From the IMG/VR virus record IMGVR_UViG_3300036770_008729, positions 186,001 through 250,000 of that record: a DNA stretch of 64,000 nt; one strand, written 5' to 3'. The notes under the pieces were generated by a model that saw only the letters and a program-made list of their open reading frames with translations, made no database searches and had not been told where the DNA came from. How positions within the stretch are numbered: the first letter of the stretch is position 1; each line of letters starts with the position of its first letter. Positions 1,897 through 59,750 of this stretch are shown here, one piece after another. Made by a program: the position numbers and the translations under genes.

Positions 1897-2571
1897 ATGG
1901 ATAGAATAAAAAAACTCGAAAATATAAAATTGATGAAAGAGTTAGATTTTATAGAATCCGAGTTCAATTACAAAAATGAAGTAATATGTGAAGCTGATAC
2001 AAGCTTTCTTAAAACCGTCAATGCTTATCTAGATATTCATCCAGAATTAAAAAAACTTTTTGACGAAAAGATTAACAGAAAGATAGAGGAAATGTTACAG
2101 AAAAAAACACAAGAGGAAAATGATCAATCAGAAAGTGAATTGGCCAACGATGAATTTGACTTGGCTACAGAATTACATTCTGAACAGCAAGAAGAAAAAG
2201 AAGAAATTGTTCAGAATGAAGAAAATTCAACAGATTTTCGAAATGAAAAGTTAAAAAAACTTTACAGAGAGATTGCTAAACTAACACATCCAGATAAAGT
2301 TAAAAATAATAAATTAAATTCTCTCTATCTTAAAGCCACATCATTTTATGATGAAAATAACATTTTTGGTATTTATGCAATTTGCAATGAACTCGAAATA
2401 TATTACGAAATAGACGAAAATGATAATGTTTTTTTGGTTGAAAAAATAAGCAACCTAAAACAAAGAATTAGTTTTTTAGAATCAACTTTTACTTGGAAGT
2501 GGAAACACACGGATGATTCAAAAGAAAGAGAGACTATAATAATAAGATATATTTCATCACAATTATCTTAA
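1897..2571 (+). CDS. J-domain-like (DnaJ/HscB-type) protein
   Basis: LYREIAKLTHPDK with HPD motif. Confidence 0.7.
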   Translation: MDRIKKLENIKLMKELDFIESEFNYKNEVICEADTSFLKTVNAYLDIHPELKKLFDEKINRKIEEMLQKKTQEENDQSESELANDEFDLATELHSEQQEEKEEIVQNEENSTDFRNEKLKKLYREIAKLTHPDKVKNNKLNSLYLKATSFYDENNIFGIYAICNELEIYYEIDENDNVFLVEKISNLKQRISFLESTFTWKWKHTDDSKERETIIIRYISSQLS

Positions 2572-3236
2572 CTTACGTTTATCTTAACATTTCTTGTATT
2601 AATCAATTCTTCTAGTTCATCTTTTCTAAATATCTTTTTGAAATATTCATTTTCTTTTTTTGGATCTACTAATTCCCATTCATTACCGTTTGAAGTTTGA
2701 TATTCATATTTTTCATTTCCATCTTCTATTTGTATATTTTTAGAAGATAGCTTTGAATAAAAGTTATTTATGTTTTCTAAAGCTTCATAAAGTTCAATAT
2801 CAGACCAACCCTGTGATATGACTTCACCATTTTTATCTTTAATCTCATCCCAGTATTGAAATAGTAGATAGATTGGGTTGATTGGTGGATTTGGAATAGT
2901 CTCTATATCAAAGGCCTCAGATCCATGAATAAACATAAATTTACAAGGCTTATTAATAAATGTTTGAAAGTCATCAGTATATTGTATGGGAGAAAGTCTC
3001 AATTTTATCGAGGTTAATGCATTAATAAAATCAGTTTTCTTTGCTAAGTCCTCTAAATCAATTTTAACAGAAAAGTCGGATTTTGGTAAATTAAACTTAT
3101 CGTGAAAATCCAATCTATTCATAGAAGATAATAGATCGTTCTTAAATACAGTCAATGATTCAGAAAGGTCAAATTGATTAAAAAAATCAATATTCAATGA
3201 TTCCGAAAACTTTTTATATGATTTGATGTATCTCAT
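2568..3236 (-). CDS. Hypothetical protein with CTS-like N-terminus
   Basis: MRYIKSYKKFSES; late-type motif upstream. Confidence 0.8.
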   Translation of the reverse strand: MRYIKSYKKFSESLNIDFFNQFDLSESLTVFKNDLLSSMNRLDFHDKFNLPKSDFSVKIDLEDLAKKTDFINALTSIKLRLSPIQYTDDFQTFINKPCKFMFIHGSEAFDIETIPNPPINPIYLLFQYWDEIKDKNGEVISQGWSDIELYEALENINNFYSKLSSKNIQIEDGNEKYEYQTSNGNEWELVDPKKENEYFKKIFRKDELEELINTRNVKINVS

Positions 3237-10487: not shown

Positions 10488-10537
10488 TAAACTTTTGATT
10501 CTGATGCTATATAAAAATAAATAAAATATAATTTATT

Positions 10538-10777
10538 ATGGCAACAAGTAAGCACAGAAAGAATCACAAAAAAAAGTTAAAAGCTAGACAAGATAAACTT
10601 AAACAAGAGAAGTCAAAAATGCAAAAAATGCAACGTGAATTTATCATGAATCTTATCAAACAAGAGCAAGAAAAGGGATTGTTTAATAACACAACAAATA
10701 TTGAACAAGCTATCGGAAATGGACCGATAATTGAGGGACCATCGGTTGGTCCTATAATTGAAGGACCATCAATTTAA
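10538..10777 (+). CDS. Small basic hypothetical protein with GPIIEGPS duplication
   Basis: ORF track. Confidence 0.7.
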   Translation: MATSKHRKNHKKKLKARQDKLKQEKSKMQKMQREFIMNLIKQEQEKGLFNNTTNIEQAIGNGPIIEGPSVGPIIEGPSI

Positions 10778-10971
10778 TTAAAGATATAACCAAAAAAATT
10801 CATAAAAGAAGAAGGCTTTTTAGAAGTAGATTTTCTCTTCTCTAATAAAGCCTTTTCTATTTTTGATACTAAATATTTTCTAGCCAATTCTGATTTGGAA
10901 CAGTCTCTCATTTTACAACTAATGAGATAAGAATTAGCTAATAATATTGAATCTATAACCTGTTTTTCCAC
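10774..10971 (-). CDS. Small hypothetical protein (probable GTG start at 10971)
   Basis: Fills intergenic gap; TATATA motif upstream; ORF track version extended to 11046. Confidence 0.45.
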   Translation of the reverse strand: MEKQVIDSILLANSYLISCKMRDCSKSELARKYLVSKIEKALLEKRKSTSKKPSSFMNFFGYIFN

Positions 10972-11028
10972 CAAAATCAACTTTTTTAATGTTGTATATA
11001 TAAAAAAGAAAAACCAATTTTTTAATTT

Positions 11029-12111
11029 GTGAAAAAAATAGAACAAAATACAACTAAAAATTTAAATATTAACATCAATAAAGATGATAATACAATCAAT
11101 GACTTTCTTTATTGTTGGAATCATTTTTCTACAAGACCAAACAGACTAACAATCTATAACTCTTATTCATCAAGCGATTTCAACGAATACATTTTAAGTA
11201 ATCATATTGAAAAAACAATTCATACTGAAGTTATTCCTGCGGAAGAGATGAGTATAATCAACGATCAGATGTTTGTAAAAATTGAAGAAAATATTTTTAT
11301 TTCTTACATAATTGTTGATAGGAATAATGATAATTCAATTGTAAATGAGGTAACATTTTTTTATAAAACAGACGATGATTACAAAAAAATAATTTCAATT
11401 ATTGAGAAACTTGACAATTTCATAGTTTCTTATCAAGAAGAAAGCTCTTGTTCAATTAATACCTTATCAATATCTCAAAATAGTATAGAAATAGAGCCTC
11501 TGTTGCCTAAAGAATTAGATTATGAAAATATTGATCTTTATTATAACAAAAAAACTTTCTCTAAAATAGATAAACTTATTAAGTCAATTAAAAAATCAAA
11601 AAAAGGACTATCAGTTCTTTATGGAGAAAGAGGAGTTGGTAAAACATCTATAATAAATTATTTATCATCAAAACTTGACAGAATAGTTATTTTCATTCCA
11701 AATAACCTTATTGAACAAACTATAAATAACCCAGAGTTTAGAAAATTTTTGAAAAAACATCACAATCCTATACTAATAATAGATGATTGTGAGATGTTGT
11801 TCAATGAAGTTTTTGCTAAATCAAACATCTTTGTGAACAATCTACTTCAACTAGTTGAGGGTTTTTTATCCGATAGTATAGAAGTTAGCGTGGTTTCAAT
11901 TTTTAATGTAGATGATGAAGATGAGATAGACCATTCATTATTAGATTGCAACACTTTAATAGATGTAATAAGATTCGATCTTCTTTCCGAAGAAGAGTCA
12001 GTTGAATTGTCGAAGCATTTAGAATTTGATAAGAAATATAAGTCAAAAAATAGACTTGTAGATGTCTTAAAAAAGAAAGAAACAAAGAATCAATCTGATA
12101 TAGGATTTTAA
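11029..12111 (+). CDS. AAA+ ATPase
   Basis: Walker A GERGVGKT, Walker B LIIDDCE. Confidence 0.85.
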   Translation: MKKIEQNTTKNLNININKDDNTINDFLYCWNHFSTRPNRLTIYNSYSSSDFNEYILSNHIEKTIHTEVIPAEEMSIINDQMFVKIEENIFISYIIVDRNNDNSIVNEVTFFYKTDDDYKKIISIIEKLDNFIVSYQEESSCSINTLSISQNSIEIEPLLPKELDYENIDLYYNKKTFSKIDKLIKSIKKSKKGLSVLYGERGVGKTSIINYLSSKLDRIVIFIPNNLIEQTINNPEFRKFLKKHHNPILIIDDCEMLFNEVFAKSNIFVNNLLQLVEGFLSDSIEVSVVSIFNVDDEDEIDHSLLDCNTLIDVIRFDLLSEEESVELSKHLEFDKKYKSKNRLVDVLKKKETKNQSDIGF

Positions 12112-12129
12112 AAATTAAATATATAAACT

Positions 12130-12465
12130 ATGATATCCGAACTGAATGACCAAGAAATATTAGACTTTTTAATGACTTCTGATTTTGAAGGAGACTATTC
12201 ACCAGAAGAACTAAAATATCTTTTAGTTAAATGGAGATATTTCTATAGATTATTAAATGGTAAGTTAGAAAGAGCGGTTGATGAAATAGAATTCAATCTT
12301 AAAAAATCGAAAGAGGTTGAAGAATCAAATGACTATAAAACTAAAAATCTTCAACAGGAAGTTATTAAAAAAGATGAAACAATCTACTATTTGAAAAATA
12401 AGAAATTAAATTGGAAGGAAAGGATATCAGGAAAAATTATTCACATTGAAAATGAAAATAAATGA
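12130..12465 (+). CDS. Hypothetical coiled-coil protein
   Basis: ORF track. Confidence 0.7.
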   Translation: MISELNDQEILDFLMTSDFEGDYSPEELKYLLVKWRYFYRLLNGKLERAVDEIEFNLKKSKEVEESNDYKTKNLQQEVIKKDETIYYLKNKKLNWKERISGKIIHIENENK

Positions 12466-13576
12466 ATTCAAGAAACTTGAAGAAAAAATCAATGGTCAAA
12501 ACTTTAACCAGGGATATAAGAATATTAATACTCTTATGTTCGTGCTTTCTATTTTTGGACATTTTGCTTCAATATTCTTAGCATATTTTGCACTATCTAA
12601 AGTCCTTTCAGGTGTAATTGAAAACAACCAAATAGTAGTTTTCATCACATCTGTAATTCTTCTTTCAGGTTTGGAGCTAATAAAAAGAGATATTTTTGAC
12701 AAATTCTCTATACAATATCTTAAAATCAAAGCTTTCACAAAAGATGTTCTACCACTTTTTATATTGAGTTGTGCTATTATAGCAACATCTTTTTATGCAT
12801 CTATTCACGGTGCACAAGAGTTCTCATCTAAAACCGATGTTATTGAAAAAGATAAAAAAGAAGTAATAACAAAGGTAAGCGATTCTTTGACTTCTGTTTA
12901 CAATGTAAAGATTGTAGATATAGAAAATGAAATCAAAGCTATAAAATCTAAAATAGAAACAAAAGATAAAGAACAAACAGAATTAGAAGCAATTCAACCA
13001 CCAACTCGTTCTGCTAAACAACGAATTAAAGATTTAAAAGATGAGAAAACCATATTAAGAACAGATATTACAAAGTTAGAATCTGATGAGGATAAGGTAA
13101 AAGATGAGTTAAGTGTGAAGATTAAGGAACAAGAGACAGAAATTACAACTGAAACTGAAAAGAAAAAAGAAGGCAATGATAGTAATTCTTTGGCATTTGT
13201 TTTAATTTCCACACTAATCGAACTTATCATTTTAGCTGGTGTTTATTTTAATGAATACTATAAATTTAGGTCTTATAGAGAGTTTAGACAGCAAATAGAA
13301 AAAGATCCTAACTATCAGAAGTGGATGCTTTACGATCAAATTTTAGACATCATCTACCCAGAAGATGCTAAGATGAACCAGAAATTACCATCAAATAAGG
13401 TGATTGCTGACATGTGTAAAGTAAATGAGATAATAGTTATGCCAAAAGATATAACAAACTTCTTGAAAGTCACTTCTAATTTAGGTATTATAAAAACATC
13501 TGGATCAACCAGATACATAAACAAGCAAAGAGATTTAGCTTTTGAGATTTTGAAAAAGCACTTTGGTATTCAATGA
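12446..13576 (+). CDS. Membrane protein, 3 TM plus long coiled coil plus TM
   Basis: Hydrophobic segments flanking a charged heptad region. Confidence 0.75.
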   Translation: MKMKINEFKKLEEKINGQNFNQGYKNINTLMFVLSIFGHFASIFLAYFALSKVLSGVIENNQIVVFITSVILLSGLELIKRDIFDKFSIQYLKIKAFTKDVLPLFILSCAIIATSFYASIHGAQEFSSKTDVIEKDKKEVITKVSDSLTSVYNVKIVDIENEIKAIKSKIETKDKEQTELEAIQPPTRSAKQRIKDLKDEKTILRTDITKLESDEDKVKDELSVKIKEQETEITTETEKKKEGNDSNSLAFVLISTLIELIILAGVYFNEYYKFRSYREFRQQIEKDPNYQKWMLYDQILDIIYPEDAKMNQKLPSNKVIADMCKVNEIIVMPKDITNFLKVTSNLGIIKTSGSTRYINKQRDLAFEILKKHFGIQ

Positions 13577-13794
13577 TAGGAGAAGTTCATAGATATTTAG
13601 GAGGTGATTCATTCTTAGATGGTCACTTGGAAGTTGGTAGCTTTTATACTATTGAATCTGTTGGTGAAGTTGATGGTAATGAATTTGTTACATTCAATGA
13701 GACAAAAAGAGCTAGCTACATACACACATTAGAAGCACATTTCAAAAACATTTCTAAAGAAAGAGATTTGAAGTTGACAACTTTATTAGATTAA
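13573..13794 (+). CDS. Small hypothetical protein with C-terminal tag (ERDLKLTTLLD)
   Basis: ORF track; tag motif. Confidence 0.7.
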   Translation: MIGEVHRYLGGDSFLDGHLEVGSFYTIESVGEVDGNEFVTFNETKRASYIHTLEAHFKNISKERDLKLTTLLD

Positions 13795-13804
13795 TATATA
13801 TTAA
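13791..13804. promoter_or_regulatory. TTAATATATATTAA palindromic late-type motif
   Basis: Same motif seen upstream of many genes. Confidence 0.4.
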
Positions 13805-13809
13805 TATTT

Positions 13810-14649
13810 ATGGTTGAAACTCCGTTTAACTACACTGGTTCGAAATATAAACTACTTAATCAGATACTTCCGGAATTTGATTATACTAAATCAAATTTTG
13901 TTGATTTATTTGCGGGAGGTGGTAGTGTTTATACAAATGTTGTCGATAAATATCAAAAAGTTTTAGTAAATGATATTATAGCAGATTTAATCGGAATACA
14001 CGAAAATATTGTTTCTGGTGATGAAATAATTCAAGATACTAAAAGTATATGTCCGGGTAAAAATAATGCACCAGGATTTGCAGAATTGAGAAATTCATAC
14101 AACACTAATCCAACATCGGCTAAACTTTGGGCATTAATGCTATCTTCAACAAATAATATGATGAGGTTCAATCAGAAATTCAAATATAATCAGACTTATG
14201 GCGAAAGAGGTTGGAATTCAAACACAGATACTAAAGTCGATACTTTCAAAAATCATATCAGACAATATAAAGACAGATTGAGGTTCATTTCAAAACCTTT
14301 TTATGAAGTTCCTATTAAATCAAATGTTATGTATTACATCGACCCACCCTATGGGAGAATAAAATCTGTAGATGGTAGCATTGGAAAAAAACAAATCTCA
14401 GAGGCTGGTTATAATGCTTTTTGGAAAGAAGATGATGATAAAAATCTATTCGATTATATCAAACAAATAGATCAAAATGGATCATCATTTATGGTTTCTG
14501 GAGTATTAGAACACGATGATAAGGTCTGTTGGATGTTAGATAAATTAATACAAGATGGTTTTAATGTTCAAGAGTTGAAATTCGATTACAATAAGGTTTC
14601 GAGAAAAGGTGATAAAATCACAAAAGAAGTTATAATAAAAAACTATTAA
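13810..14649 (+). CDS. dam: DNA adenine methyltransferase (D12/Dam-like)
   Basis: PFNYTGSK, DLFAGGGSV, DPPY motifs. Confidence 0.85.
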   Translation: MVETPFNYTGSKYKLLNQILPEFDYTKSNFVDLFAGGGSVYTNVVDKYQKVLVNDIIADLIGIHENIVSGDEIIQDTKSICPGKNNAPGFAELRNSYNTNPTSAKLWALMLSSTNNMMRFNQKFKYNQTYGERGWNSNTDTKVDTFKNHIRQYKDRLRFISKPFYEVPIKSNVMYYIDPPYGRIKSVDGSIGKKQISEAGYNAFWKEDDDKNLFDYIKQIDQNGSSFMVSGVLEHDDKVCWMLDKLIQDGFNVQELKFDYNKVSRKGDKITKEVIIKNY

Positions 14650-26117: not shown

Positions 26118-26275
26118 ATAACATTATATGGATAAAGATTTCGGTGGTTTAAGTATAAAAATGAAAAAAAATCTACTTTTTTTTCTGTTTTTACAAAACT
26201 TTTTAAAACTTAAGCCCTGCTTGTCTGTATAACATTCATACGGGTTTCCCGTAACAAAAAAATAAAAATTCGGAA

Positions 26276-26548
26276 ATGAATAAAGCAGATTTAGTAAATG
26301 AAATCGCTAAAGAAACCGGACTTACTAAAACTAAGTCAAGCGAAGTTGTTGATACAATTGTTGAAACAATCTCTAACTCCCTTAAAAAAGGTGAGAAAGT
26401 AACGCTTGTAGGTTTTGGAACTTTTACAACTTCTAAGAGAAGTGCTCGTAAAGGTCGTAATCCTAAAACCGGTGCAGAAATTAACATTCCTGGTAAAACA
26501 GTTGCTCGCTTCAAAGCTGGCTCTGAACTTACTAAGACAGTTAACTAA
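26276..26548 (+). CDS. hup: HU family DNA-binding protein
   Basis: MNKADLV...VTLVGFGTF...RKGRNPKTG...FKAG. Confidence 0.95.
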   Translation: MNKADLVNEIAKETGLTKTKSSEVVDTIVETISNSLKKGEKVTLVGFGTFTTSKRSARKGRNPKTGAEINIPGKTVARFKAGSELTKTVN

Positions 26549-26916: not shown

Positions 26917-27120
26917 CTATTTGTTATAATTGTCTAAAAAGTTCTTTTCGTGTTGTGATAAAGATTCAATACCACTTTGATTAATCTTTTCTAAAATCTT
27001 ATTTAACTTGTTTTCTCTGAATGATCTTCTGTCATTAAACTCATCATCAGTCAAAGGCCTCTGGTGTTTGACTTCAATTTCTTTCTTACCAAACCTTCTA
27101 AGCCAATCTAAAAATTTCAT
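26917..27120 (-). CDS. Small protein with DUF6576-like C-terminus
   Basis: [28 protein letters not shown]. Confidence 0.6.
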
Positions 27121-28037
27121 AACTCTTTGTTTTTCTTAGCAAACTCAGCAGCTGCCTCTCTTACCCAAGCACCATCCTCGTGAGCTTTTACTCTCATTTT
27201 AAGTCTATCTCTATTCATTGGACCATTTCCACTTACTACCTTATCAAATTCATCCCAATCTGGTTCAGTGAAATTCCAATTTCCAGTTGATTCATCAAAC
27301 TTTAAGTTTTCATCTGGTATAGTTAATCCTAAATAATCAGCCTGTGGTTTAGTTTGATTTACAAACTTTTGTCTTAACTGATCATTCGTTTCTCTTTTGA
27401 TTCTCCACTTAATCGCGTTCTCTGAATTATGAGACCTACTATCCGGTGGTCCAAACATCATTAAAGTTGGATACCACCATCTGTTTAAGGCATCTTGTGC
27501 CATTTCTTTTTGTTCAGATGACCCGAATGATAACTTGGTCATAATTTCATAACCCTGCCTTTGATGAAAACTTTCTTCTTTACATATCCTAACCATTGCT
27601 CTAGCATAAGGACCATAAGAAGCTCTCTGTAACATTACTTGATTCATTATAGCAGCACCATCAACTAACCAACCGATAGCTCCCATATCAGCCCAAGTCA
27701 AAGTAGGATAGTTAAATATAGAAGAATATTTTGCTTTTCCACAATGTAAAGCATCTAATAATTCCTCTCTTGAAACTCCTAATGTTTCTGCAGCTGTATA
27801 GAGGTAAAGACCGTGACCACCTTCGTCTTGAACTTTTGCTAAGAGTATTAGTTTGGCTCTAAGTGAAGGAGCTCTTGTAATCCAATTTGCTTCAGGTAAT
27901 TGACCAATAATTTCAGAGTGAGCGTGTTGAGAAATCTGACGAATAAGATGCTTTCTGTAATCCTCCGGCATCCAGTCTTTAGGTTCGATGTATTGATTTT
28001 GTTCTAATTTAGAATCAAATTTTGGTTGATGTTCCAT
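27117..28037 (-). CDS. paaA: 1,2-phenylacetyl-CoA epoxidase catalytic subunit A (di-iron, ferritin-like)
   Basis: [44 protein letters not shown]. Confidence 0.92.
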
Positions 28038-28224
28038 TATCAGTATCTATTTTTTTATTATACTCCCATGGACAATGTCTGCAATAATTCTTACAACATC
28101 TAACTCTAATCATTTGTAAATACTCTTTTGTCCAAACTCTAAGTTTAACACCATCAACTTCTTCCCAATAGAAATCAACACCTTCAATAAGGTCTTCTAT
28201 GTGAAATCGTTTGTTTTCGCACAT
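28015..28224 (-). CDS. DUF5522-like Cys-rich protein
   Basis: EYL...[12 protein letters not shown]. Confidence 0.6.
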
Positions 28225-28227
28225 AAA

Positions 28228-28908
28228 TTATTTACTTTTTCTAAAAGATTCGAAGTTTTTAACCCATTTTTTAGATTCTGTTGTAGACATTGATTTAACT
28301 ATACCTTCAAGCTCTAACAAAGTCTTTTTATAATCAGTGTGTAAGATTGCAGTTCCACCAGCCGATGTAAACTTCTCAACATATTTAGGTCTATCATCAA
28401 TTAATATGTCTGTTTTACCTTCAGCAGCTTTACCTTTATCAACTGTTATAATTACTTGGTCAACCATTCCTTCAAAATGTTCTTTTACCCAATCTTTCTT
28501 TTCAATAACAGATGGATTATTCAAATCATTTTCATCACCAACAGGCGCTGATAATATATTAGGTAATTTGCCAGTCAATTCCGCAGCCTTAGCAACCATT
28601 TCTTTTGCACCAGGCATTAGTGGTAAGTTTCTATAGAAACCAGGTTTTGCAGCTATACTAAAGACTTTAGAAGTATATTTATTGAAAGACTTTTTAAGCT
28701 CTTTAACTGGACTATTTGGATCTTTTTCTAATTCTGCCTTGAATTTAGTTTTGATATCATCATCAACTAATCCTTTGTAGTCTTGAAACTTGGTTTCAAT
28801 TAGATTGTCTAAATCGGCTCTTAGTTGTATTATCTCTGGATTTTTTTTAAGACCACCATCCATATCGGCTAAAACGCCATCTAAGTCAAAAAATATTCTT
28901 GTTTCCAT
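28228..28908 (-). CDS. HAD-family 5'(3')-nucleotidase (NT5C-like)
   Basis: FFDLDGVLAD and ILIDDRPKY motifs. Confidence 0.85.
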   Translation of the reverse strand: METRIFFDLDGVLADMDGGLKKNPEIIQLRADLDNLIETKFQDYKGLVDDDIKTKFKAELEKDPNSPVKELKKSFNKYTSKVFSIAAKPGFYRNLPLMPGAKEMVAKAAELTGKLPNILSAPVGDENDLNNPSVIEKKDWVKEHFEGMVDQVIITVDKGKAAEGKTDILIDDRPKYVEKFTSAGGTAILHTDYKKTLLELEGIVKSMSTTESKKWVKNFESFRKSK

Positions 28909-29408
28909 TATTTAAAATCTTCTTTTTTAATATCACCAATTGAGCCAAATGAATCAGCAAATCCAGGTGTTTTTTTATTCTCCACATTATTTGCAATAGT
29001 TATATGAAAATATCTTTCTGACTCAGGATTAGTTAAACCAAGTTGTTCATAGATTGAATCTACAAAAGATTTTATCTCTTCTTGATTTTGAACCGCAACT
29101 ACAAAACTTTTCTTTCCTTTTTCTGGTCTTTCCGCAAAGGTTGTTTGGCCTAATACAATTTTAGGCATTTCCATTTTTGGAAGTCCTTCTTTAAGTTTAT
29201 CTTTATTTTGTTTACAGTTAGCTATAGAAGTTAAGGTTATATGCAACTTATCTTCAGCTAAAGGAAAATAAGACTTAGCTTCTTCATTTCCCTCATAAAT
29301 ATTTTTAATTTCGGATTTAGTTGTGTTATCTAACTTTAGAAGAAGAGCCGCCTCAAAAACTATACAATTATCACCTGTAAAATCTTCATATAATTTTAAA
29401 TATTTCAT
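28908..29408 (-). CDS. 2H phosphoesterase with CTS-like N-terminus
   Basis: Two HxT motifs (LHITL, FHITI); MKYLKLYEDF. Confidence 0.75.
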   Translation of the reverse strand: MKYLKLYEDFTGDNCIVFEAALLLKLDNTTKSEIKNIYEGNEEAKSYFPLAEDKLHITLTSIANCKQNKDKLKEGLPKMEMPKIVLGQTTFAERPEKGKKSFVVAVQNQEEIKSFVDSIYEQLGLTNPESERYFHITIANNVENKKTPGFADSFGSIGDIKKEDFK

Positions 29409-29443
29409 AATATAAATTGTTTTTTGTATATATTAAAAAAACA

Positions 29444-30046
29444 CTACAATTTTATAAAATCTAATTCTTTAAGTGAAAACGTAATAAACATTATAGAAAA
29501 CAATATTCCAATCAAATTAAAAGAAACTAAATAAAAGACTAAAAGCAAAACACTAAATAAAAGAGAAATCCATGCACTTATTGTAATTGATTTTTGTCTA
29601 TCTCCTGTTTTTAATACTAAAATACTTCTCAATATACGACCACCATCTAAAGGAAAGATTGGAATTAAATTGAATATAAAAAGAAATAGATTGACTAAAT
29701 ACATGCTGTAAAAAAACTGACAAGGAAAAAATGCGTAGGCAAATAGTGATAGTGATATTAAGACTAAATTGACCCAAGGTCCAGCACCAACTATTAGTAT
29801 CATATCTCTTTCTCTGATAGAATCTATATTCATATTGGCTTGACCAGCGAATAATCCAACTTCTATACCAGTGACACTATATCCTTTTTTTTGAGCCACC
29901 CAAGCGTGACCAATTTCATGGAGTAGAATTGAAATAAAGATTGAGACTACAAAGACTGGTGATAGCCAAAAGAAAAGCAGTAAAAACCATAAGCTAAGAT
30001 TAACAGGAACACCCCTGAAGTTGAAAATTTTGATTTGTGTTTTCAT
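29444..30046 (-). CDS. Site-2 protease, M50 family
   Basis: HEIGH, GAGPWVN, FNLIPIFPLDGG. Confidence 0.9.
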   Translation of the reverse strand: MKTQIKIFNFRGVPVNLSLWFLLLFFWLSPVFVVSIFISILLHEIGHAWVAQKKGYSVTGIEVGLFAGQANMNIDSIRERDMILIVGAGPWVNLVLISLSLFAYAFFPCQFFYSMYLVNLFLFIFNLIPIFPLDGGRILRSILVLKTGDRQKSITISAWISLLFSVLLLVFYLVSFNLIGILFSIMFITFSLKELDFIKL

Positions 30047-30106: not shown

Positions 30107-31576
30107 TTATTTTATTATTGATACTTTATCTATTGTTAAATCCCCAGTATGTTTACCGTTATCTTTGTAAATGGTAATGTTATATTCAGCAGACGCTGGA
30201 ACCTCATACTCAAAAGTAAACTCTGGTCTTCCATTTTTATTTAACTTCCTACAACATCCCTTCTCACAAGACTTACCAGACATTTTATGGTCTGCTCCAA
30301 AGAAGTTCATAAATCCAGCGAATGTGGAATTTGTAGGGTTACAAACACCATTCTCGTTTACATAAACCTCATAAACACCTTTTGGAACTTTTGTAAAACT
30401 AACAACAACTTCTAACTTTACCTTTTTGGTTGAAGTTAGGTTGATTTGAGTTAAGCCAAGAACTTTGATACCGGTGGTTATCTTACCACTTACTTTAGTT
30501 CCAGGTGTTGATTGTGCAAATAACTTCGGTTCTACCTCATCCATCAATCTAACTTCTTTTATTTTAACAGGAGTGTCATCAAAATCATAATCCATAGTGT
30601 AGATAATATCCAATGCCTCTTCTAAAGAATAAACTACTTTCTCACCATTCTCATTGAAGAAAACATAAGGCCACTCTACTTCTTCTAACTGTTCTATTGT
30701 AACAGGTTGACCATTATTAGAATTGTGCCATTGTTGCCAAATACGGTCTATATTAGAATGATGTGTCCAAAAGATAGGATCGAAAGCAGCAGTTGGAACC
30801 CAACCCATAAGTCCAGTATTTGTGGTAGTTCCAGTAATTGAATTATTAAACTGTAAAGTTCCTGTTGTATCATTACCAGCACCAATGTAATCATGCATTG
30901 CACCGTGAGGAGCATTATTTATGTTAAGACAAAACATTTTATAATCAGTATAACTCATTATTTTTGTTAAGTCTAAAGATCTACTAATTTCACCAGATAC
31001 CGGCCATCCATCATTCAAACTATCATATCTAGCTTCTTCAAAAAGTGAAGAGTGTTTATCTCTAAATAAATCTGGAATACATCTATCTCTATCATTATTA
31101 TTTGTATAAGCCCAATAAGGAAGTGCAAAATCATTATATCCTGATAATTTTCTAACTATTTTTTCAAAGTGCCAGATATAAAGACGGTGCCAAACTAAAA
31201 AGTGTAATTTTTCTTTACCTGATGGAGTGTGAGTACAATTATCCCAACCATCCATTTTATCACCTACATTGTGATAAGCACCACACCATCGATTGTTTTT
31301 AATTGTATCAGGAACCCAGTGAATGGCACCTTGATAATACCAACTCAGGGGATCTTTACAATCTTTTTTTCTCATAATATCTAAAGCTTTGTTTAAGGCT
31401 AAAAGGTCGTTAATGGCTTCAGGTGAATTTGCATTTTTTCTTGTAAATCTTTGTTGTTCTGTTTGTTTCTCGTTATTACTACAAGAAAAAAGAAACATAC
31501 TAAAAACGATTAAGAAAAAGATAATAAGACCAATAAATAACTTTTTAAGGTCTTTGTAAGTAGTGAATCGATTCAT
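30107..31576 (-). CDS. Tyrosinase / polyphenol oxidase (type-3 copper), predicted lipoprotein
   Basis: IHW, CTH, FLVWHR, PHGAMH, DPIFWTHHSNIDRIW; LFSC lipobox-like. Confidence 0.9.
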   Translation of the reverse strand: MNRFTTYKDLKKLFIGLIIFFLIVFSMFLFSCSNNEKQTEQQRFTRKNANSPEAINDLLALNKALDIMRKKDCKDPLSWYYQGAIHWVPDTIKNNRWCGAYHNVGDKMDGWDNCTHTPSGKEKLHFLVWHRLYIWHFEKIVRKLSGYNDFALPYWAYTNNNDRDRCIPDLFRDKHSSLFEEARYDSLNDGWPVSGEISRSLDLTKIMSYTDYKMFCLNINNAPHGAMHDYIGAGNDTTGTLQFNNSITGTTTNTGLMGWVPTAAFDPIFWTHHSNIDRIWQQWHNSNNGQPVTIEQLEEVEWPYVFFNENGEKVVYSLEEALDIIYTMDYDFDDTPVKIKEVRLMDEVEPKLFAQSTPGTKVSGKITTGIKVLGLTQINLTSTKKVKLEVVVSFTKVPKGVYEVYVNENGVCNPTNSTFAGFMNFFGADHKMSGKSCEKGCCRKLNKNGRPEFTFEYEVPASAEYNITIYKDNGKHTGDLTIDKVSIIK

Positions 31577-31664: not shown

Positions 31665-33359
31665 ATGAAATGGATTAAAACTAGAAAACAATTTTTGATA
31701 GAAGCTATCGAGGATGAAATATTCCCTAGACAAGCTGAAGCGATTAAAAGGACTTGGGGTGAAAAATATTTAAAAATGACCAAGCCTCCTGTATCAAATG
31801 AACTTAAAAAATATGAAGGTAAATGGAAATTATCCGAAGAAGATAAATTAAAAATGCTAGGATCCTTCTTTCAATGTGATATGAAGGTCATTTTTGATAA
31901 TATTGCTAGTTTACCAGATAAGTTTTGTTATACGATTGCTCAATCAATTAGTATTCCACAAACTCCAGAGCCTGAAAAGTATGAAGTAGTTCTAAAAGAC
32001 TTCAATATGAAAGAACCTTCTATTGACCAAATTGTAGCAATTTTTGATAACATTTTCCGAAAATTAAATGTTAATGAAACAATTAGTGATTCTATGATTC
32101 AAAAAGATGAATCCGGAAGACCAATTAGAGATTCAGAAGGACAGATGGTAAAGGTTGCAAAAGAAAAAGGATCTCCTATTTTTACTAATAGTTGCACTAA
32201 CATTACTTCTTTCTGTGATGATTACAACAGATGTTATCCAGATGAAAAAGTAGATACAAATATTTTCACTGAAAATAATATAAAAAGTTTAAGAAACTTA
32301 GCAAAAGAAGATTGTAACGGTAAATTAAAAGTAGATTTTGAAATTTTTAACAAAGATCTTTACTTATCATTTTCTCACAATGAGAAGGACATATTAAATA
32401 TGTCTATATCAAAGTTCTACAATTCTTGTCAAAATCTTTATGATGGAGGATACAGAGAACAATTATTAGGTAATATATTTGATCCTAACTCAGCTCCAGC
32501 ATTTATGACATTTGATACTCCTATTTTCTGGGGAGATGAAAAGGTATCAGATCAATTACCTCTTTCAAGAACAGTAATAAGAAATATTGAGAATTTTGAT
32601 GGGTCTAGTCGAGGTATTTTCTTTGATAGAACTTATCCTGATAGATGTGAAAAAGTATTCAAAGAGTTATTAGTTAAGTATAGCAAAATGCAACAAACAA
32701 TAACAGATAGAGATTCTGTTACTTACTTATTTACACCAGACATCGATCCATCAGACACAGGAGTTAAAACTCCTTATATGGATAGATTAGGTGTTGATAG
32801 AAAACCAATGATTGGAGTAAATTGTAAAGCACTTTACTTATCAAGAGTAGGTGATTGGTCTGGTATAAAGATTTCACCAAATGCAAAGATTAAAGAATTA
32901 GTGGTTGAAACAACCGAAATTCCTCAGAACTTATTTGACCTTAAATTAAACTTAGATTGGATTAAATTTAAGTATTTACATTTGAAAGATTTAAAACCAT
33001 TTGGTGGTTTATTCACTGATTCAGTTGCTTTTGATAAATGTAAATTAAAGAATGAAGTTCTTCAAGAAAGAAAAGAAACTAAGAAGTTACAATTAATCAG
33101 TTGTGACATCGATGCGATTGATTTGTCTGGTTTCTCTAAATTAGAAGAGTTACACTTATTGTTAACTTTAAAAGATATAGATGAACTTAAAAGAACACTT
33201 ACAGGAACTAAACTAAAAAAGTTAGTTATCTCTGATGAAATATTAGGATTCTCTAAAAAAGATAGAAAAATGAGAATGTCTGAAGAAGCTTCTCAATTCA
33301 TCGAAGGATTAAAAAGAACTGGTGTGTCAGTAGAAATAAAAGGAATTTATAATAAATAA
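31665..33359 (+). CDS. Hypothetical protein with CTS-like N-terminus and LRR-like C-terminus
   Basis: MKWIKTRKQFLIE; LxxLxL repeats. Confidence 0.75.
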   Translation: MKWIKTRKQFLIEAIEDEIFPRQAEAIKRTWGEKYLKMTKPPVSNELKKYEGKWKLSEEDKLKMLGSFFQCDMKVIFDNIASLPDKFCYTIAQSISIPQTPEPEKYEVVLKDFNMKEPSIDQIVAIFDNIFRKLNVNETISDSMIQKDESGRPIRDSEGQMVKVAKEKGSPIFTNSCTNITSFCDDYNRCYPDEKVDTNIFTENNIKSLRNLAKEDCNGKLKVDFEIFNKDLYLSFSHNEKDILNMSISKFYNSCQNLYDGGYREQLLGNIFDPNSAPAFMTFDTPIFWGDEKVSDQLPLSRTVIRNIENFDGSSRGIFFDRTYPDRCEKVFKELLVKYSKMQQTITDRDSVTYLFTPDIDPSDTGVKTPYMDRLGVDRKPMIGVNCKALYLSRVGDWSGIKISPNAKIKELVVETTEIPQNLFDLKLNLDWIKFKYLHLKDLKPFGGLFTDSVAFDKCKLKNEVLQERKETKKLQLISCDIDAIDLSGFSKLEELHLLLTLKDIDELKRTLTGTKLKKLVISDEILGFSKKDRKMRMSEEASQFIEGLKRTGVSVEIKGIYNK

Positions 33360-33360
33360 T

Positions 33361-34995
33361 ATGAAATATCTAAAACTATTTGAAGCTTTCGAATCGACTA
33401 TATTAAGTAAAACTTTATCTTTCATCAAAGATGAAGAGTCTAAGAAACAATTCATGTTTGCACTAGACAAGATTTGTTCTACAATTGATTATCCTAAATC
33501 TGAGTTAAAAGATGAATACTTTCAATACTTATCATTTTACCCAGCACTTAAACTAAGTGCTAAAACAGGTGATGAACCTTGTGAAGCTTTATCACGTGAT
33601 TCTTATCCAGACTATGCAGTTGATGGGGCAAAGTGTAAAGGAGGTAAAGTATTAAGAAAGTGGGGAGCAAGAACAAGAGAAGTTGAATGTAGTATATGTA
33701 AAGGAACTGGTGTTAAACCAAAGAAACCTGAAATTAAGTTAGTTAAGTTTTGGTTTTCAACAGAAGGTAAATATATTGCTGTTACAGCAGTTGATGGCTT
33801 AATAAGAAACACAACGACTTCATCAACCGCGAGAGGGTATTCTAAAGACTATCAAGATTATATAGTAGTTAACACCACTGAAGATTCTAGAGAACTACAA
33901 ACTGGAATGATAGTTAGAGTTACTATTAATGGAAGACCTACTATTTGTTATATTGTTAAAGATAGAAATACTTATCCATATGCAATACAAGATGAACACA
34001 GTGGATCCACACCAGATAACATACCTTCTAGAAACTGGAGGAATTTTGGACATAGTTCTTGGCACTTATCAAGAGGTGAATACAGAGGAACAATTGAAAT
34101 ACTTGAACCAAAAAGTAAAGAAGAGGTTATTGTAGAACCAAATCCTTATACTTGGAATGCAACGCTTAGCTTATCTGGTTATTCAGGTATGAAAGTAGAT
34201 ATTTATTCTGATGTTCAAGAAAAAATTAAGGATGCAAACTTTGCTATTGTTTTAGATTTCGGTAAGATGAAACAATCAGAATTCAAAACTACTTATTCAA
34301 CGAGAAGTGAAAGAGAAGAATCTAGAACTGGTGCATTAGCATTAGAGAAACCTGAAGATATAAAAGCAACTAACATTGAAAGATATATTAAAAGTTTATC
34401 TGATAAAGTTGCAAGTGGAGATGAATTAACAAAAGTAACAAGAGTTATTCCAAGATTAATGGGTGGAAGAAATATTTTGCTTTATATTGGTATGAATAGA
34501 AATCTTTCAACTATTGATAGTTTAGCTACACGACTTTATAGATTTATTACAGAAGATGAGGACAATAAAGAATACAATGCAAGAGAAATAGTAGCAACAA
34601 TAAAAAACTCATACAAACAAAATCTACAATTTACTACTGATTTAAATGAAGTTTTAGATGAAGTAAGAAAACAATTACAAAAACCAGGAAAAGAAGCTTA
34701 TTTATCAACATTTGACAAAATGTTAGAGATATCACAAAAGATAAATGATAAAGTATTTTCAACAGAAGTTAAATCTATTGAAGATATTGAATACATCTAT
34801 CAAAAATTGAGGACAATTCAAAATATGTTACAATCCAGTCGTAATCCAGCAAATAGATTGAGATACTTTATGGAAAGATTAAGTTATCTAACTACTGATA
34901 GATGTGTATCTAGAATTTTAGAAATTGACCAAGATGAAATACCAAGTATAATTGAAGGTCTAGAATCAATTGGAAGATTTGTTGAGAGAGTTTAA
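33361..34995 (+). CDS. Hypothetical protein with CTS-like N-terminus and CxxCxGxG Zn motif
   Basis: MKYLKLFEAFES; CSICKGTG. Confidence 0.8.
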   Translation: MKYLKLFEAFESTILSKTLSFIKDEESKKQFMFALDKICSTIDYPKSELKDEYFQYLSFYPALKLSAKTGDEPCEALSRDSYPDYAVDGAKCKGGKVLRKWGARTREVECSICKGTGVKPKKPEIKLVKFWFSTEGKYIAVTAVDGLIRNTTTSSTARGYSKDYQDYIVVNTTEDSRELQTGMIVRVTINGRPTICYIVKDRNTYPYAIQDEHSGSTPDNIPSRNWRNFGHSSWHLSRGEYRGTIEILEPKSKEEVIVEPNPYTWNATLSLSGYSGMKVDIYSDVQEKIKDANFAIVLDFGKMKQSEFKTTYSTRSEREESRTGALALEKPEDIKATNIERYIKSLSDKVASGDELTKVTRVIPRLMGGRNILLYIGMNRNLSTIDSLATRLYRFITEDEDNKEYNAREIVATIKNSYKQNLQFTTDLNEVLDEVRKQLQKPGKEAYLSTFDKMLEISQKINDKVFSTEVKSIEDIEYIYQKLRTIQNMLQSSRNPANRLRYFMERLSYLTTDRCVSRILEIDQDEIPSIIEGLESIGRFVERV

Positions 34996-44141: not shown

Positions 44142-44513
44142 TTAGAAATTATAAATTTCTAGTTTAATCCATCTCCTATCATCATTCACAACAACAGAAT
44201 AACCTATCTTTACTTGAGGGAATTCCATTTCCACTCTTTTAATAGAAACCTTTATCTCATTACAAAATTCCTGCAACCTGGAAGATTTCTGTATATAAGA
44301 ATCTAAAAATTCCACTAAATCTTTATCAACACCCAATTCTCTTGGAGTATTAACCATACTAGGCACCGGTACCATTATCTCATAATATGGATGTGAATAC
44401 TGAGGTGGTAGTTTAACCTCTTTAGCATTCCAATCTTCAATAAGATTGAGAAATATATAATGAATTGATAAAAACCCTTCATTAGATTCATTATATTTCT
44501 TTAAGTGTCTCAT
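44142..44513 (-). CDS. Hypothetical protein with CTS-like N-terminus
   Basis: MRHLKKYNES. Confidence 0.75.
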   Translation of the reverse strand: MRHLKKYNESNEGFLSIHYIFLNLIEDWNAKEVKLPPQYSHPYYEIMVPVPSMVNTPRELGVDKDLVEFLDSYIQKSSRLQEFCNEIKVSIKRVEMEFPQVKIGYSVVVNDDRRWIKLEIYNF

Positions 44514-45267: not shown

Positions 45268-45591
45268 ATGACATCCCAAGAAATCAAACTCTACGGCAGA
45301 CAAATAGTAGAATCAATCACCAAAAGCGATATACCATACACCGATATCAATAAATGTAAAGAATTTCATATCGATTTCTCATTTCCAAGCTGGTCAATAG
45401 GCAAAGGCACAAACCCTAATCATAATATACTCGGACACTCACATATAATACTAACCTGGAACGCAATGCCTCATAAAAAATCCAGCATAATATGGACTAA
45501 CCTAAAACAAATAAAAACAACTGAATTAAACTCAATTATAGAAGCAATTAAAAGAGATATAAAATTAAATACAATACTAATCCATAACTAA
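45268..45591 (+). CDS. Hypothetical protein with tag (KRDIKLNTIL)
   Basis: ORF track. Confidence 0.65.
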   Translation: MTSQEIKLYGRQIVESITKSDIPYTDINKCKEFHIDFSFPSWSIGKGTNPNHNILGHSHIILTWNAMPHKKSSIIWTNLKQIKTTELNSIIEAIKRDIKLNTILIHN

Positions 45592-46083
45592 AAACCATAA
45601 ATGAATAGGTACATAACTATTACAAATAACATCACCATTATCATTTAAATAAGATATACGACTATTTAACTTCGATACCAAATCATATACCCTAGATATC
45701 AACATATCCGTAGAACTAAAATTCTCCTTACTCAACATCTCCTGACTACCAAAATAATTCCAACCCCATAACACAACCGGCTTCATCTCATAATCAGATA
45801 TAACATTTAATATATGCTGAACTAAATCACCTCCTCTTAACGATTCATCTAAATCATTCCAACTCATAGAAGAATAATCACATGCAAATGAGACATCTAT
45901 CACCTTCTTTCCATAAATACTCTTTGGAATACTACCACTTACCATTATAGCAAATCTATGAGGCTCACCATTTAATAAAAATTCCTTTACTCCAATCTTA
46001 CTCTTTATTAAATCAGATAGTGGCCTTAACTCAGATGATTTTAAACCCGATTCAAATATTTTATACTCTTTTATATGTTTCAT
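45577..46083 (-). CDS. Hypothetical protein with CTS-like N-terminus
   Basis: MKHIKEYKIFES. Confidence 0.75.
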   Translation of the reverse strand: MKHIKEYKIFESGLKSSELRPLSDLIKSKIGVKEFLLNGEPHRFAIMVSGSIPKSIYGKKVIDVSFACDYSSMSWNDLDESLRGGDLVQHILNVISDYEMKPVVLWGWNYFGSQEMLSKENFSSTDMLISRVYDLVSKLNSRISYLNDNGDVICNSYVPIHLWFLVMD

Positions 46084-59653: not shown

Positions 59654-59674
59654 ATATATTCAAAGAACTATTTG

Positions 59675-59750
59675 TCGTTAGGGTAGGACTCGAACCTACA
59701 ATCTTTCGGGATTTTCACCCGAACGCTCTATCAAATTGAGCCACCTAACT
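59675..59750 (-). tRNA. tRNA-Phe-like element with damaged anticodon arm (pseudo-tRNA E)
   Basis: AGTTAGG acceptor (A1-G72 mismatch), GCTC/GAGC D-stem, TTCGGG-TGAAAAT-CCCGAA, GTAGG-TTCGAGT-CCTAC. Confidence 0.6.

What the first reader, a model, noticed from the sequence alone, without database searches (positions are those of the whole stretch)
30107..31576. Phage-encoded secreted tyrosinase / polyphenol oxidase
Seen: CuA and CuB His motifs, a lipobox-like signal and a PPO-type C-terminal domain. Known: type-3 copper oxidases make melanin and quinones. Inference: periplasmic or surface oxidation of phenolics, UV shielding or cross-linking. With paaA it points to aromatic-compound chemistry in the infected cell.
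Basis: partly seen in the sequence, partly recalled or inferred. Interest (0 to 1): 0.6.

Follow-up and report, generated by a model that had tools for sequence, protein, structure and literature searches.

The report
Huge-phage exported latent polyphenol oxidase
A very large freshwater bacteriophage, probably infecting Bacteroidota, carries an intact gene for an exported, lid-capped copper enzyme of the tyrosinase/polyphenol-oxidase family. Two dozen other viral contigs, several from jumbo phages, carry close relatives, but no sequenced reference phage does, and its role in infection is unknown.

Summary
Window 30107-31576 (-) is an intact 489-aa ORF with Pfam Tyrosinase (E 2.6e-26). All six copper-ligand histidines are present: H86/H116/H130 and H224/H228/H273. 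It also has a lipoprotein-type signal (Cys32) and a C-terminal lid domain. The AF2 model (pLDDT 87) matches two-domain latent enzymes over residues ~40-489: Hahella HcTyr1 at Z 29.8 and tomato/apple PPO at Z ~28. Invariant F426 aligns with the HcTyr1 placeholder Phe397.

The gene lies deep inside a 281-kb phage record, collinear with a curated 634-kb 'Mahaphage' predicted to infect Bacteroidetes. It fills a variable slot: a 476-kb relative has it at the same place, the 634-kb one does not.

Twenty-two viral copies form one clade, sister to Bacteroidota lipoprotein tyrosinases. No match was found in 50,697 GenBank phages, PHROGs or BFVD.

The viral clade replaces the bacterial His-rich lid loop with an SCxxGCC loop, placed like the fungal CXXC copper-loading motif.

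The paaA link is not supported. PaaA is an orphan subunit, is not conserved beside the gene, and is separated from it by unrelated genes.

Expression and activity are unproven. Verdict: a real new member of a known enzyme kind in an unreported (phage) setting; moderate interest.

The parts
30107..31576 (-). Complete CDS of the 489-aa tyrosinase/PPO-family protein (P0001), stop codon included
31481..31576 (-). N-terminal export signal, residues 1-32: basic n-region, an 18-residue hydrophobic helix, then lipobox L-F-S-C32
   Evidence: PS51257-style rule met; the model shows helix 7-31 followed by a disordered stretch 32-39
30572..31450 (-). Catalytic type-3 copper domain, residues ~43-335
   Evidence: Pfam PF00264; VIA Z ~24 at rmsd 2.4 to catechol oxidase 1bt1 and walnut tyrosinase 5ce9 over residues 40-335
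31187..31321 (-). CuA site: H86, C114-T115-H116 (C-x-H, a candidate thioether pair) and H130, with an 8-residue loop plus the extra invariant H125 between HA2 and HA3
   Evidence: Alignment to HcTyr1 His43/78/87; invariance; the loop is shared with bacterial relatives; coordinates checked
30758..30907 (-). CuB site: H224-x3-H228 and H273 (second His of the HH pair)
30110..30526 (-). C-terminal beta-sandwich lid domain, residues ~351-489
   Evidence: Full-length structural alignments to latent PPOs and HcTyr1; strands in the model
30299..30301 (-). F426, the predicted active-site placeholder of the lid (motif FAGFMNFFG)
   Evidence: Aligns with HcTyr1 Phe397; invariant in 42 sequences
30251..30268 (-). 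C437-x3-C441-C442 loop, specific to the viral clade and low-confidence in the model; candidate copper-loading loop
   Evidence: fungal CXXC analogy from PMC4157443
31577..31664 (.). 88-bp A/T-rich divergent intergenic region between the tyrosinase and the conserved gene 31665-33359. No Shine-Dalgarno sequence precedes the ATG
   Evidence: the sigma-70 scan was not above chance
26917..30046 (-). Co-oriented variable cassette downstream: 67-aa ORF, PaaA, DUF5522, NT5C nucleotidase, 166-aa 2H-phosphoesterase-like ORF and M50 protease. Not conserved with the tyrosinase

Best explanation
The gene encodes a Sec-exported, lipid-anchored pro-form of a binuclear-copper o-diphenol oxidase/tyrosinase, made in the infected Bacteroidota-type cell.

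Proposed mechanism:
1. The N-terminal signal sends the apo-protein across the inner membrane, and Cys32 is lipidated.
2. Copper is loaded in the periplasm, possibly helped by the flexible Cys loop C437/C441/C442 that follows the placeholder.
3. The lid domain keeps F426 in the substrate pocket until the lid is cut off or displaced.
4. The open enzyme uses O2 to turn phenols/catechols into reactive o-quinones at the cell envelope.

Origin: the gene was captured once from a Bacteroidota lipoprotein tyrosinase lineage. It now circulates as an accessory gene among jumbo/huge freshwater phages.

Most likely benefit (inferred): handling environmental phenolics/humics, or quinone tanning of the virocell surface, during a long infection.

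Shown: gene integrity, family, ligand set, architecture, phage location, phylogeny, and recurrence in independent samples. Inferred: export route, latency, copper loading, substrates, and biological role.
For: Family and ligands.

Fold and lid. Z is 29.8 to 8b74, 28.2 to 6hqi and 27.9 to 6els, each spanning residues ~40-489.

Placeholder: F426 = HcTyr1 Phe397.

Lipobox. The closest bacterial homologues have textbook lipoprotein signals.

Phage location:
- 281-kb record with uniform ~30% GC and 27 tRNAs.
- Baseplate wedge, virion structural protein, topoisomerase II subunits and homing endonucleases.
- Ten window genes collinear with LR745206.1 on both sides of the slot.
- That 634-kb genome matches the Mahaphage genomes predicted to infect Bacteroidetes.

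Single viral clade, sister to Bacteroidota: (SH-aLRT 95 for both splits).

Real and recurrent: three independent freshwater DNA studies hold the locus at ~97-99% identity with bridging contigs. Listed variants are synonymous or conservative and miss the invariant columns.

Cys loop versus His-rich loop. Fungal CXXC 'copper grappler' just after the placeholder, and the C-x-H thioether.
Against: - No activity data exist.
- No transcript evidence: the one metatranscriptome run gave only low-complexity 32-nt pieces plus one 189-nt contig in the neighbouring gene.
- HB1+1 is an invariant Gly (G225) rather than the Asn that, from my memory of the literature, favours monophenolase activity. The enzyme may therefore be a catechol oxidase rather than a true tyrosinase.
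- The three Cys may simply form a periplasmic disulfide.
- Only ~40% of family members have a lipobox; the rest look like signal-anchor or Sec-signal proteins.
- Host assignment is indirect.
Confidence: 0.7

Rival explanations
1. It is a passenger gene: a recently acquired host tyrosinase carried in a hypervariable slot, with no role in infection.
For: The gene sits in a slot whose content differs among three collinear relatives. The neighbouring cassette is a functional grab-bag. No expression evidence was found.
Against: The viral copies form one old clade, only 43-49% identical to the nearest bacterial genes but 56-76% identical to each other, with all ligands, the placeholder and 100+ other columns invariant. 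Gene GC (0.33) is near the phage's 0.30, whereas the nearest bacterial loci are 0.37-0.52. The tyrosinase is better conserved than a baseplate gene across carrier phages. A clade-specific lid-loop change is maintained.
Confidence: 0.12
2. It forms an aromatic-compound module with PaaA: the tyrosinase and PaaA act together on phenylacetate or phenolic substrates in the infected cell.
For: PaaA is a genuine equivalog. It lies 2 kb downstream on the same strand in a tightly packed gene run.
Against: PaaA acts on a CoA thioester in the cytoplasm and needs PaaB/C/E. None of these is in the record, whereas the tyrosinase is exported. The intervening genes are unrelated. No other tyrosinase-bearing viral locus has PaaA nearby; the closest relative, G001/L108, has the tyrosinase without it.
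Confidence: 0.05
3. The region is bacterial (host flank or mis-binned DNA), so the enzyme is an ordinary Bacteroidota tyrosinase rather than a phage gene. The IMG/VR label is 'provirus'.
For: The 'provirus' class label. Few PHROG hits in the immediate neighbourhood.
Against: The gene is 216 kb into the record and 65 kb from its end, with uniform GC. Flanking genes on both sides are collinear with a curated circular 634-kb phage genome and a 476-kb viral contig. The nearest relatives all sit in phage-like contexts. No GTDB genome has a copy above 49% identity on a long contig.
Confidence: 0.03
4. It is a non-catalytic or different-chemistry type-3 copper protein, for example an O2 binder, an o-aminophenol oxidase or a hydroxylase in a small-molecule pathway, rather than a phenol oxidase.
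For: The type-3 copper fold also serves hemocyanins and o-aminophenol oxidases. There are weak NCBIfam hits to BagH/FevF and top sequence hits to mollusc hemocyanin units. Extra invariant His (H125, H136, H272) near the site are unexplained.
Against: The best structural and architectural matches are enzymatically characterised tyrosinases/PPOs with lids. No biosynthetic cluster surrounds the gene in phages or bacteria. Hemocyanin hits are inflated by multi-domain summation.
Confidence: 0.1

Closest known systems
HcTyr1, tyrosinase of Hahella sp. CCB MM4 (PDB 8b74; PMC11609597)
   Same: Two-domain bacterial tyrosinase with a covalently attached lid. VIA Z 29.8 with 367 residues aligned. The same six His ligands, the same C-x-H at HA2, the Phe placeholder in the aligned F-x-G-x3-F-G motif, and a profile E-value of 1.3e-33.
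   Different: Only ~24% identity. HcTyr1 has the canonical 9-residue HA2-HA3 spacing, whereas this family has a 5-residue insertion carrying the invariant H125. The printed HcTyr1 alignment, which ends four residues past the placeholder, shows no Cys after it. The chain as crystallised (466 residues) begins at the catalytic domain, and the paper's text mentions no signal peptide. It is cellular, not viral.
Latent plant polyphenol oxidases (tomato 6hqi/6hqj, apple MdPPO1 6els, Coreopsis aurone synthase 4z11-4z14)
   Same: Catalytic domain plus linker plus C-terminal shielding beta-sandwich; Z 26-28 over residues ~40-489. A PPO1_DWL-like segment is seen in 33 of 42 family members. A 'YEVYVN...FAGFMNFFGxDH' block recalls the plant 'KFDV...FAGSF' block (the motif resemblance is from my own knowledge).
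   Different: 17-23% identity and no PPO1_KFDV Pfam match. From my own knowledge of the plant structures, plants place the thioether Cys near HA1, whereas here it is a C-x-H pair. Plants use plastid transit peptides, whereas this protein has a bacterial lipoprotein signal.
Fungal pro-tyrosinases (Agaricus abPPO4 4oua/5m6b; Aspergillus melB 3w6q)
   Same: C-x-H thioether arrangement at HA2, a Phe placeholder on a lid loop, and a disordered loop with a Cys motif just after the placeholder that is implicated in copper incorporation. Z 18-21.
   Different: More distant in fold and sequence. The fungal motif is CXXC, whereas here it is C-x3-C-C. The fungal enzymes are cytosolic, whereas this one is exported.
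Bacteroidota lipoprotein tyrosinases (Telluribacter, Emticicia, Mucilaginibacter, Flavobacterium cerinum; uncharacterised)
   Same: Sister clade, 44-49% identity over the full length. Same CuA loop, same lid motif FxGFMTFFGADH, lipoprotein signals, and standalone genes.
   Different: They carry a His-rich loop after the placeholder where the viral clade has SCxxGCC. They are chromosomal.
Streptomyces MelC2 tyrosinase with MelC1 caddie
   Same: The same binuclear copper centre; the CuB region matches weakly.
   Different: MelC2 has no fused lid and relies on a separate caddie protein that loads copper (from my own knowledge, the pair is exported by the Tat route). Here the NCBIfam MelC2 score is 39 bits against a cut-off of 450, and no caddie gene or conserved neighbour exists.

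Membership tests
Type-3 copper tyrosinase/PPO (Pfam PF00264) | Profile match above the curated threshold | tested here: met
   93.7 bits against a cut-off of 22.6, E 2.6e-26; all 42 relatives match
Type-3 copper tyrosinase/PPO (Pfam PF00264) | Six histidine ligands, three for CuA and three for CuB | tested here: met
   H86/H116/H130 and H273 align to HcTyr1 His43/78/87/238. H224-x3-H228 is the CuB HxxxH pair. All are invariant
Type-3 copper tyrosinase/PPO (Pfam PF00264) | Helical-bundle catalytic fold | tested here: met
   Z ~24 at rmsd 2.4 A to 1bt1, 5ce9 and 8bbq over residues 40-335; model pLDDT 87
Type-3 copper tyrosinase/PPO (Pfam PF00264) | O2-dependent phenol/catechol oxidase activity with two Cu per protein | not testable with these tools
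   Needs recombinant protein and an L-DOPA/catechol/tyrosine assay
Type-3 copper tyrosinase/PPO (Pfam PF00264) | Cys-His thioether at HA2 (present in the fungal, mollusc and plant subgroups) | tested here: inconclusive
   The C114-x-H116 motif is invariant and matches the abPPO4 Cys80-His82 pattern. The covalent bond itself cannot be seen in sequence
Latent two-domain PPO/tyrosinase with C-terminal lid | C-terminal beta-sandwich domain fused after the catalytic domain | tested here: met
   Alignments to 8b74, 6hqi, 6els, 7xio and 4z1x span model residues ~40-489
Latent two-domain PPO/tyrosinase with C-terminal lid | Bulky placeholder residue from the lid occupying the active site | tested here: inconclusive
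   F426 aligns with HcTyr1 Phe397 and is invariant. Its position over the copper site could not be measured, because model coordinates are not exposed
Latent two-domain PPO/tyrosinase with C-terminal lid | Plant PPO Pfam domains PPO1_DWL and PPO1_KFDV | tested here: not met
   P0001 matches neither at E<=1. DWL matches 33 of 42 relatives weakly, and KFDV matches none. The protein is PPO-like in fold but not a member of the plant PPO family proper
Bacterial lipoprotein | Lipobox with Cys after an uncharged hydrophobic stretch and a basic n-region | tested here: met
   Residues 22-32 fit the PS51257-style rule. Cys32 lies within positions 15-35 and R3 within the first 7
Bacterial lipoprotein | Lgt/LspA processing and lipidation | not testable with these tools
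   Needs expression with globomycin sensitivity or mass spectrometry. SignalP/LipoP were not available
Phage auxiliary (accessory) gene | Lies inside a phage genome, flanked on both sides by phage genes | tested here: met
   Collinear flanks in LR745206.1 and G001/L108; phage hallmarks in the record
Phage auxiliary (accessory) gene | Expressed during infection | tested here: inconclusive
   The single RNA run holds no contig on the gene. This is contig data, so absence proves nothing
Streptomyces MelC2/MelC1 system | MelC2 equivalog score and an adjacent caddie gene | tested here: not met
   39 bits against a cut-off of 450; no conserved neighbour in phages or bacteria
Phenylacetyl-CoA epoxidase (PaaABCE) module | PaaA together with the PaaB, PaaC and PaaE subunits | tested here: not met
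   PaaA equivalog is present, but there is only one PaaA/PaaC-family gene and no PaaB in the record. PaaE was not searched

The most novel reading that the evidence does not exclude
A clade of jumbo/huge phages of Bacteroidota deliberately 'melanises' or quinone-tans the envelope of the infected cell. It would use a self-contained, lipid-anchored pro-phenoloxidase whose lid doubles as a cysteine-based copper loader. The resulting coat would block superinfection, grazing or oxidative/UV damage during the long replication of a very large genome. This would be a bacterial-virus counterpart of the insect prophenoloxidase response, run by the virus.
Probability: 0.1. Interest if true: 0.8.

Novelty: new member of a known kind. 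Interest (0 to 1): 0.5.

Why it matters
Tyrosinases/PPOs are well known in cells. I found none in 50,697 GenBank phage genomes, PHROGs v4 or BFVD, and no paper in the searchable library that reports a phage one.

This gene defines a coherent viral clade: 22 genomic copies in the tree and more than 100 metagenomic protein clusters at 50% identity or above. The copies are spread over jumbo phages whose virion genes are barely related or not detectably related. That pattern argues for selection on the enzyme itself.

If active, it would add extracellular phenol oxidation, which bears on humic/phenolic turnover and the 'enzymic latch' in fresh waters, to the processes that phages reprogram.

It would also offer a compact, exported, possibly self-loading copper oxidase for biocatalysis. 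The swap of a His-rich lid loop for a Cys loop is a natural experiment on how lids deliver copper.

Tried and rejected
- Hallmark Pfam searches of the record (NCLDV capsid, Terminase_6N, Gp23) found nothing. Two of them had no positive control, so I relied on PHROG scans and synteny instead.
- The first distant-DNA search was one base over the size limit. I replaced it with a protein search.
- The sigma-70 promoter scan was not above chance: 34 sites against 26.7 +/- 5.2 expected. Bacteroidota-type promoters are not covered by that tool.
- A conserved partner (caddie or chaperone) was sought in ten bacterial loci and 24 viral loci. None was found.
- I considered the M50 protease as a dedicated activator of the latent enzyme and dropped the idea. 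It is adjacent only in this phage. No complex prediction was run, because I do not claim binding.
- A second phage marker (the phrog_35217-like protein) gave no hits in five carrier records, which is uninformative.
- The metatranscriptome check gave no support for expression.
- The large representative-protein search was not used, because the word search and family scans already settled the family.
Full report
**1. The observation**

Window 30107-31576 on the minus strand is an uninterrupted 489-codon ORF with an ATG start.
- Pfam assigns it to Tyrosinase, PF00264 (E 2.6e-26, 93.7 bits against a cut-off of 22.6).
- A sequence search of the PDB finds mollusc hemocyanin units, the Hahella tyrosinase 8b74 (E 9e-23), and plant catechol oxidases/PPOs.

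**2. Active site**

In an alignment of 42 full-length relatives (50-76% identity), these residues are invariant:
- H86, H116, H125, H130, H136, H224, H228, H272 and H273
- C73, C98, C114, C441 and C442
- the lid motif F419-x-G421-x-M423-x-F425-F426-G427

A profile-to-PDB alignment, read against the ligand list published for HcTyr1 (His43/78/87/211/215/238, placeholder Phe397; PMC11609597), gives this mapping:

| Site | Residues here | Basis |
|---|---|---|
| CuA | H86, H116, H130 | align directly to HcTyr1 His43/78/87 |
| CuB | H224, H228 | assigned by the HxxxH motif |
| CuB | H273 | aligns directly to HcTyr1 His238 |

HA2 sits in an invariant C114-T-H116 triplet. That is the same C-x-H arrangement that forms a thioether in mushroom tyrosinase (Cys80-His82; PMC4157443). 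Between HA2 and HA3 this family has a longer loop than HcTyr1, with an extra invariant His (H125). The loop is shared with bacterial relatives, so it is a family trait and not a phage invention.

**3. Architecture**

An AlphaFold2 model built on the alignment is confident (mean pLDDT 87, pTM 0.86). It shows:
- an N-terminal helix (residues 7-31)
- a disordered tether (32-39)
- a helical catalytic domain (to ~335)
- a linker
- a beta-sandwich (from ~351 to 489)

Foldseek and VIA-align both rank two-domain latent enzymes first:

| Structure | Z |
|---|---|
| HcTyr1 (8b74) | 29.8 |
| Tomato PPO (6hqi) | 28.2 |
| Apple MdPPO1 (6els) | 27.9 |
| Ralstonia TYR (7xio) | 27.3 |
| Aurone synthase (4z1x) | ~26 |

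All of these alignments span residues ~40-489. Lid-less tyrosinases align only to residue 335.

F426 aligns with the HcTyr1 placeholder Phe397. It is not right at the level of Pfam membership. PPO1_DWL matches 33 of 42 relatives weakly but not this protein, and PPO1_KFDV matches none.

**4. Export signal**

Residues 22-32 (LIVFSMFLFSC) meet a PROSITE PS51257-style lipobox rule, with basic residues upstream. 47 of 117 relatives meet the same rule, and 110 of 118 have a hydrophobic N-terminal stretch. The nearest bacterial homologues carry textbook lipoprotein signals. There is no twin-arginine motif. I therefore predict Sec export and lipid anchoring, rather than free secretion, with copper loaded outside the cytoplasm.

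**5. It is a phage gene**

- The window is bases 186001-250000 of a 281,114-bp IMG/VR record with uniform ~30% GC and 27 tRNA genes.
- PHROG scans find a baseplate wedge subunit, virion structural proteins, T4-type topoisomerase II subunits and homing endonucleases.
- The divergent neighbour (31665-33359) has homologues in GenBank phages only in three 634-642 kb 'uncultured phage' records. A PrkA-like kinase from this record is 85% identical in two of them.
- Their sizes match the 634/636/642-kb genomes of Al-Shayeb et al. 2020. That paper places them in the Mahaphage clade and predicts Bacteroidetes hosts (PMC7162821).
- Ten window genes are collinear with LR745206.1 on both sides of the tyrosinase.

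The 'provirus' label therefore does not indicate a host flank at this locus.

**6. A variable slot**

The slot lies between the HU-like gene (26236-26514) and gene 31665-33359. Its content differs among three collinear relatives:

| Genome | Slot content |
|---|---|
| LR745206.1 | ~1.6 kb: DUF5522, a nucleotidyltransferase-like gene and a small ORF; no tyrosinase |
| 476-kb contig G001/L108 | tyrosinase in the same place and orientation, followed by other small genes |
| This phage | tyrosinase, then M50 protease, a 2H-phosphoesterase-like ORF, NT5C nucleotidase, DUF5522, PaaA and a 67-aa ORF |

No other viral locus has any of the cassette genes beside its tyrosinase. PaaA is a true equivalog (510 bits against 280), but it is the only Paa subunit in the record. 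The paaA argument therefore fails.

**7. Relatives and origin**

- The word search finds 1,075 homologues. The best 120 are all at least 50% identical over the full length and all come from metagenomes. The two long contexts I opened are jumbo-phage-like.
- IMG/VR holds about two dozen close copies, on contigs up to 476 kb.
- GTDB genomes hold 369 loci. The best are Bacteroidota at 44-49% identity.
- In a maximum-likelihood tree of 98 sequences (quick search), all 22 viral rows form one group (SH-aLRT 95). That group is sister to 11 Bacteroidota sequences from Emticicia, Telluribacter, Flavobacterium and Mucilaginibacter (SH-aLRT 95), inside a largely Bacteroidota tree.
- I labelled two of the 22 'viral' rows (L017, L019) by context, not by database.

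The carrier phages are heterogeneous. The baseplate wedge protein is 64% identical in G001, 31% in G002 and undetectable in the complete 299-kb G003, while their tyrosinases are 62, 59 and 57% identical to this one. This pattern suggests one capture from Bacteroidota followed by phage-to-phage spread, or unusually strong conservation. The direction of transfer rests on a midpoint root.

**8. Rarity elsewhere**

- tblastn against 50,697 GenBank phage records: no match.
- PHROGs v4: no family.
- BFVD: no tyrosinase-like fold, best TM 0.15-0.19.
- Literature searches on phage/jumbo-phage tyrosinase or PPO returned nothing relevant, and the huge-phage paper does not mention it.
- Distant tyrosinase-domain hits exist in giant-virus MAGs.

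**9. A viral-clade feature**

Directly after the placeholder, bacterial relatives carry His-rich loops, for example DHQHTGHQHH. The viral clade instead carries S-C437-x3-C441-C442 (C441 and C442 are invariant, C437 is at least 90% conserved). This loop is poorly predicted (pLDDT below 50 at 431-440).

In mushroom and Aspergillus pro-tyrosinases, a disordered loop just after the Phe placeholder carries a CXXC motif implicated in copper incorporation. I therefore propose that the lid loop is the built-in copper loader, His-based in the bacteria and Cys-based in the phages. A plain disulfide is the alternative.

**10. Reality of the locus, and expression**

The DNA recurs in freshwater and subsurface metagenomes from several studies. 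Three independent freshwater runs carry the whole 27-33 kb stretch at ~97-99% identity, with contigs bridging the gene junctions. Ten listed variants in the gene are four synonymous and six conservative changes, none at an invariant column. The only RNA run shows no contig on the gene, so expression is open.

**11. Verdict**

The finding is a real, intact, phage-borne, exported, probably latent polyphenol oxidase. As an enzyme it is a new member of a known kind. Its setting in huge phages, its recurrence as a viral clade and its Cys lid loop make it moderately interesting. Its substrates and its benefit to the phage are inferred, not shown.

Noticed in passing
Whole record; in the window e.g. 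2568-3236(-), 28908-29408(-), 31665-33359(+), 33361-34995(+), 44142-44513(-), 45577-46083(-): 39 of 379 ORFs (about 10%) begin with a near-identical N-terminus, M-[KR]-[YWFH]-[LI]-[KE]-x-[FRY], e.g. MKYLKLFEDFEE or MKHLKKYKLFE. They often occur in tandem runs. This could be a shared targeting or packaging tag, an expanded paralogue family, or a translation-start bias.
   Followed up: partly
window 27117-28037 (-): A phage-encoded PaaA that passes the NCBIfam equivalog threshold (TIGR02156, 510 bits against 280). It is the only Paa subunit in the 281-kb record, with no PaaB and no PaaC. An orphan di-iron oxygenase subunit in a phage is unexplained.
   Followed up: partly
window 29444-30046 (-): A 200-aa mini M50 (site-2-protease-like) membrane metalloprotease with HExxH and LDG motifs, immediately downstream of the tyrosinase. 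It is adjacent only in this phage.
   Followed up: partly
window 59674-59750 (-): ARAGORN calls a tRNA-Phe with the unusual anticodon AAA. The record has a second, normal tRNA-Phe(GAA) in its 258-264 kb tRNA cluster.
   Followed up: no
G000 88500-90422 (L009:8500-10419): A PrkA/YeaG-type serine kinase that is 85% identical to genes in the 634- and 642-kb huge phages. It is also found in Ralstonia phage RsoM2USA and in Thermus phages.
   Followed up: no
window 4743-10487 (+) and G000 7253-14227 (+): Two giant ORFs. The 1,914-aa one in the window has no PHROG hit. The 2,324-aa one outside the window has Hoc-like Ig decoration and tail-protein domains.
   Followed up: no
L121, L123, L125, L127, L128, L132-L135 (IMG/VR GVMAG contigs): Distant tyrosinase-domain matches (22-41% identity over 40-230 residues) occur in giant-virus metagenome-assembled genomes. 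Type-3 copper proteins may therefore also occur in viruses of eukaryotes.
   Followed up: no
whole record (G000): The record is 281 kb and CheckV rates it 94% complete. Its collinear relatives are 476-642 kb, and IMG/VR labels it 'provirus'. It may be a fragment of a larger genome.
   Followed up: no
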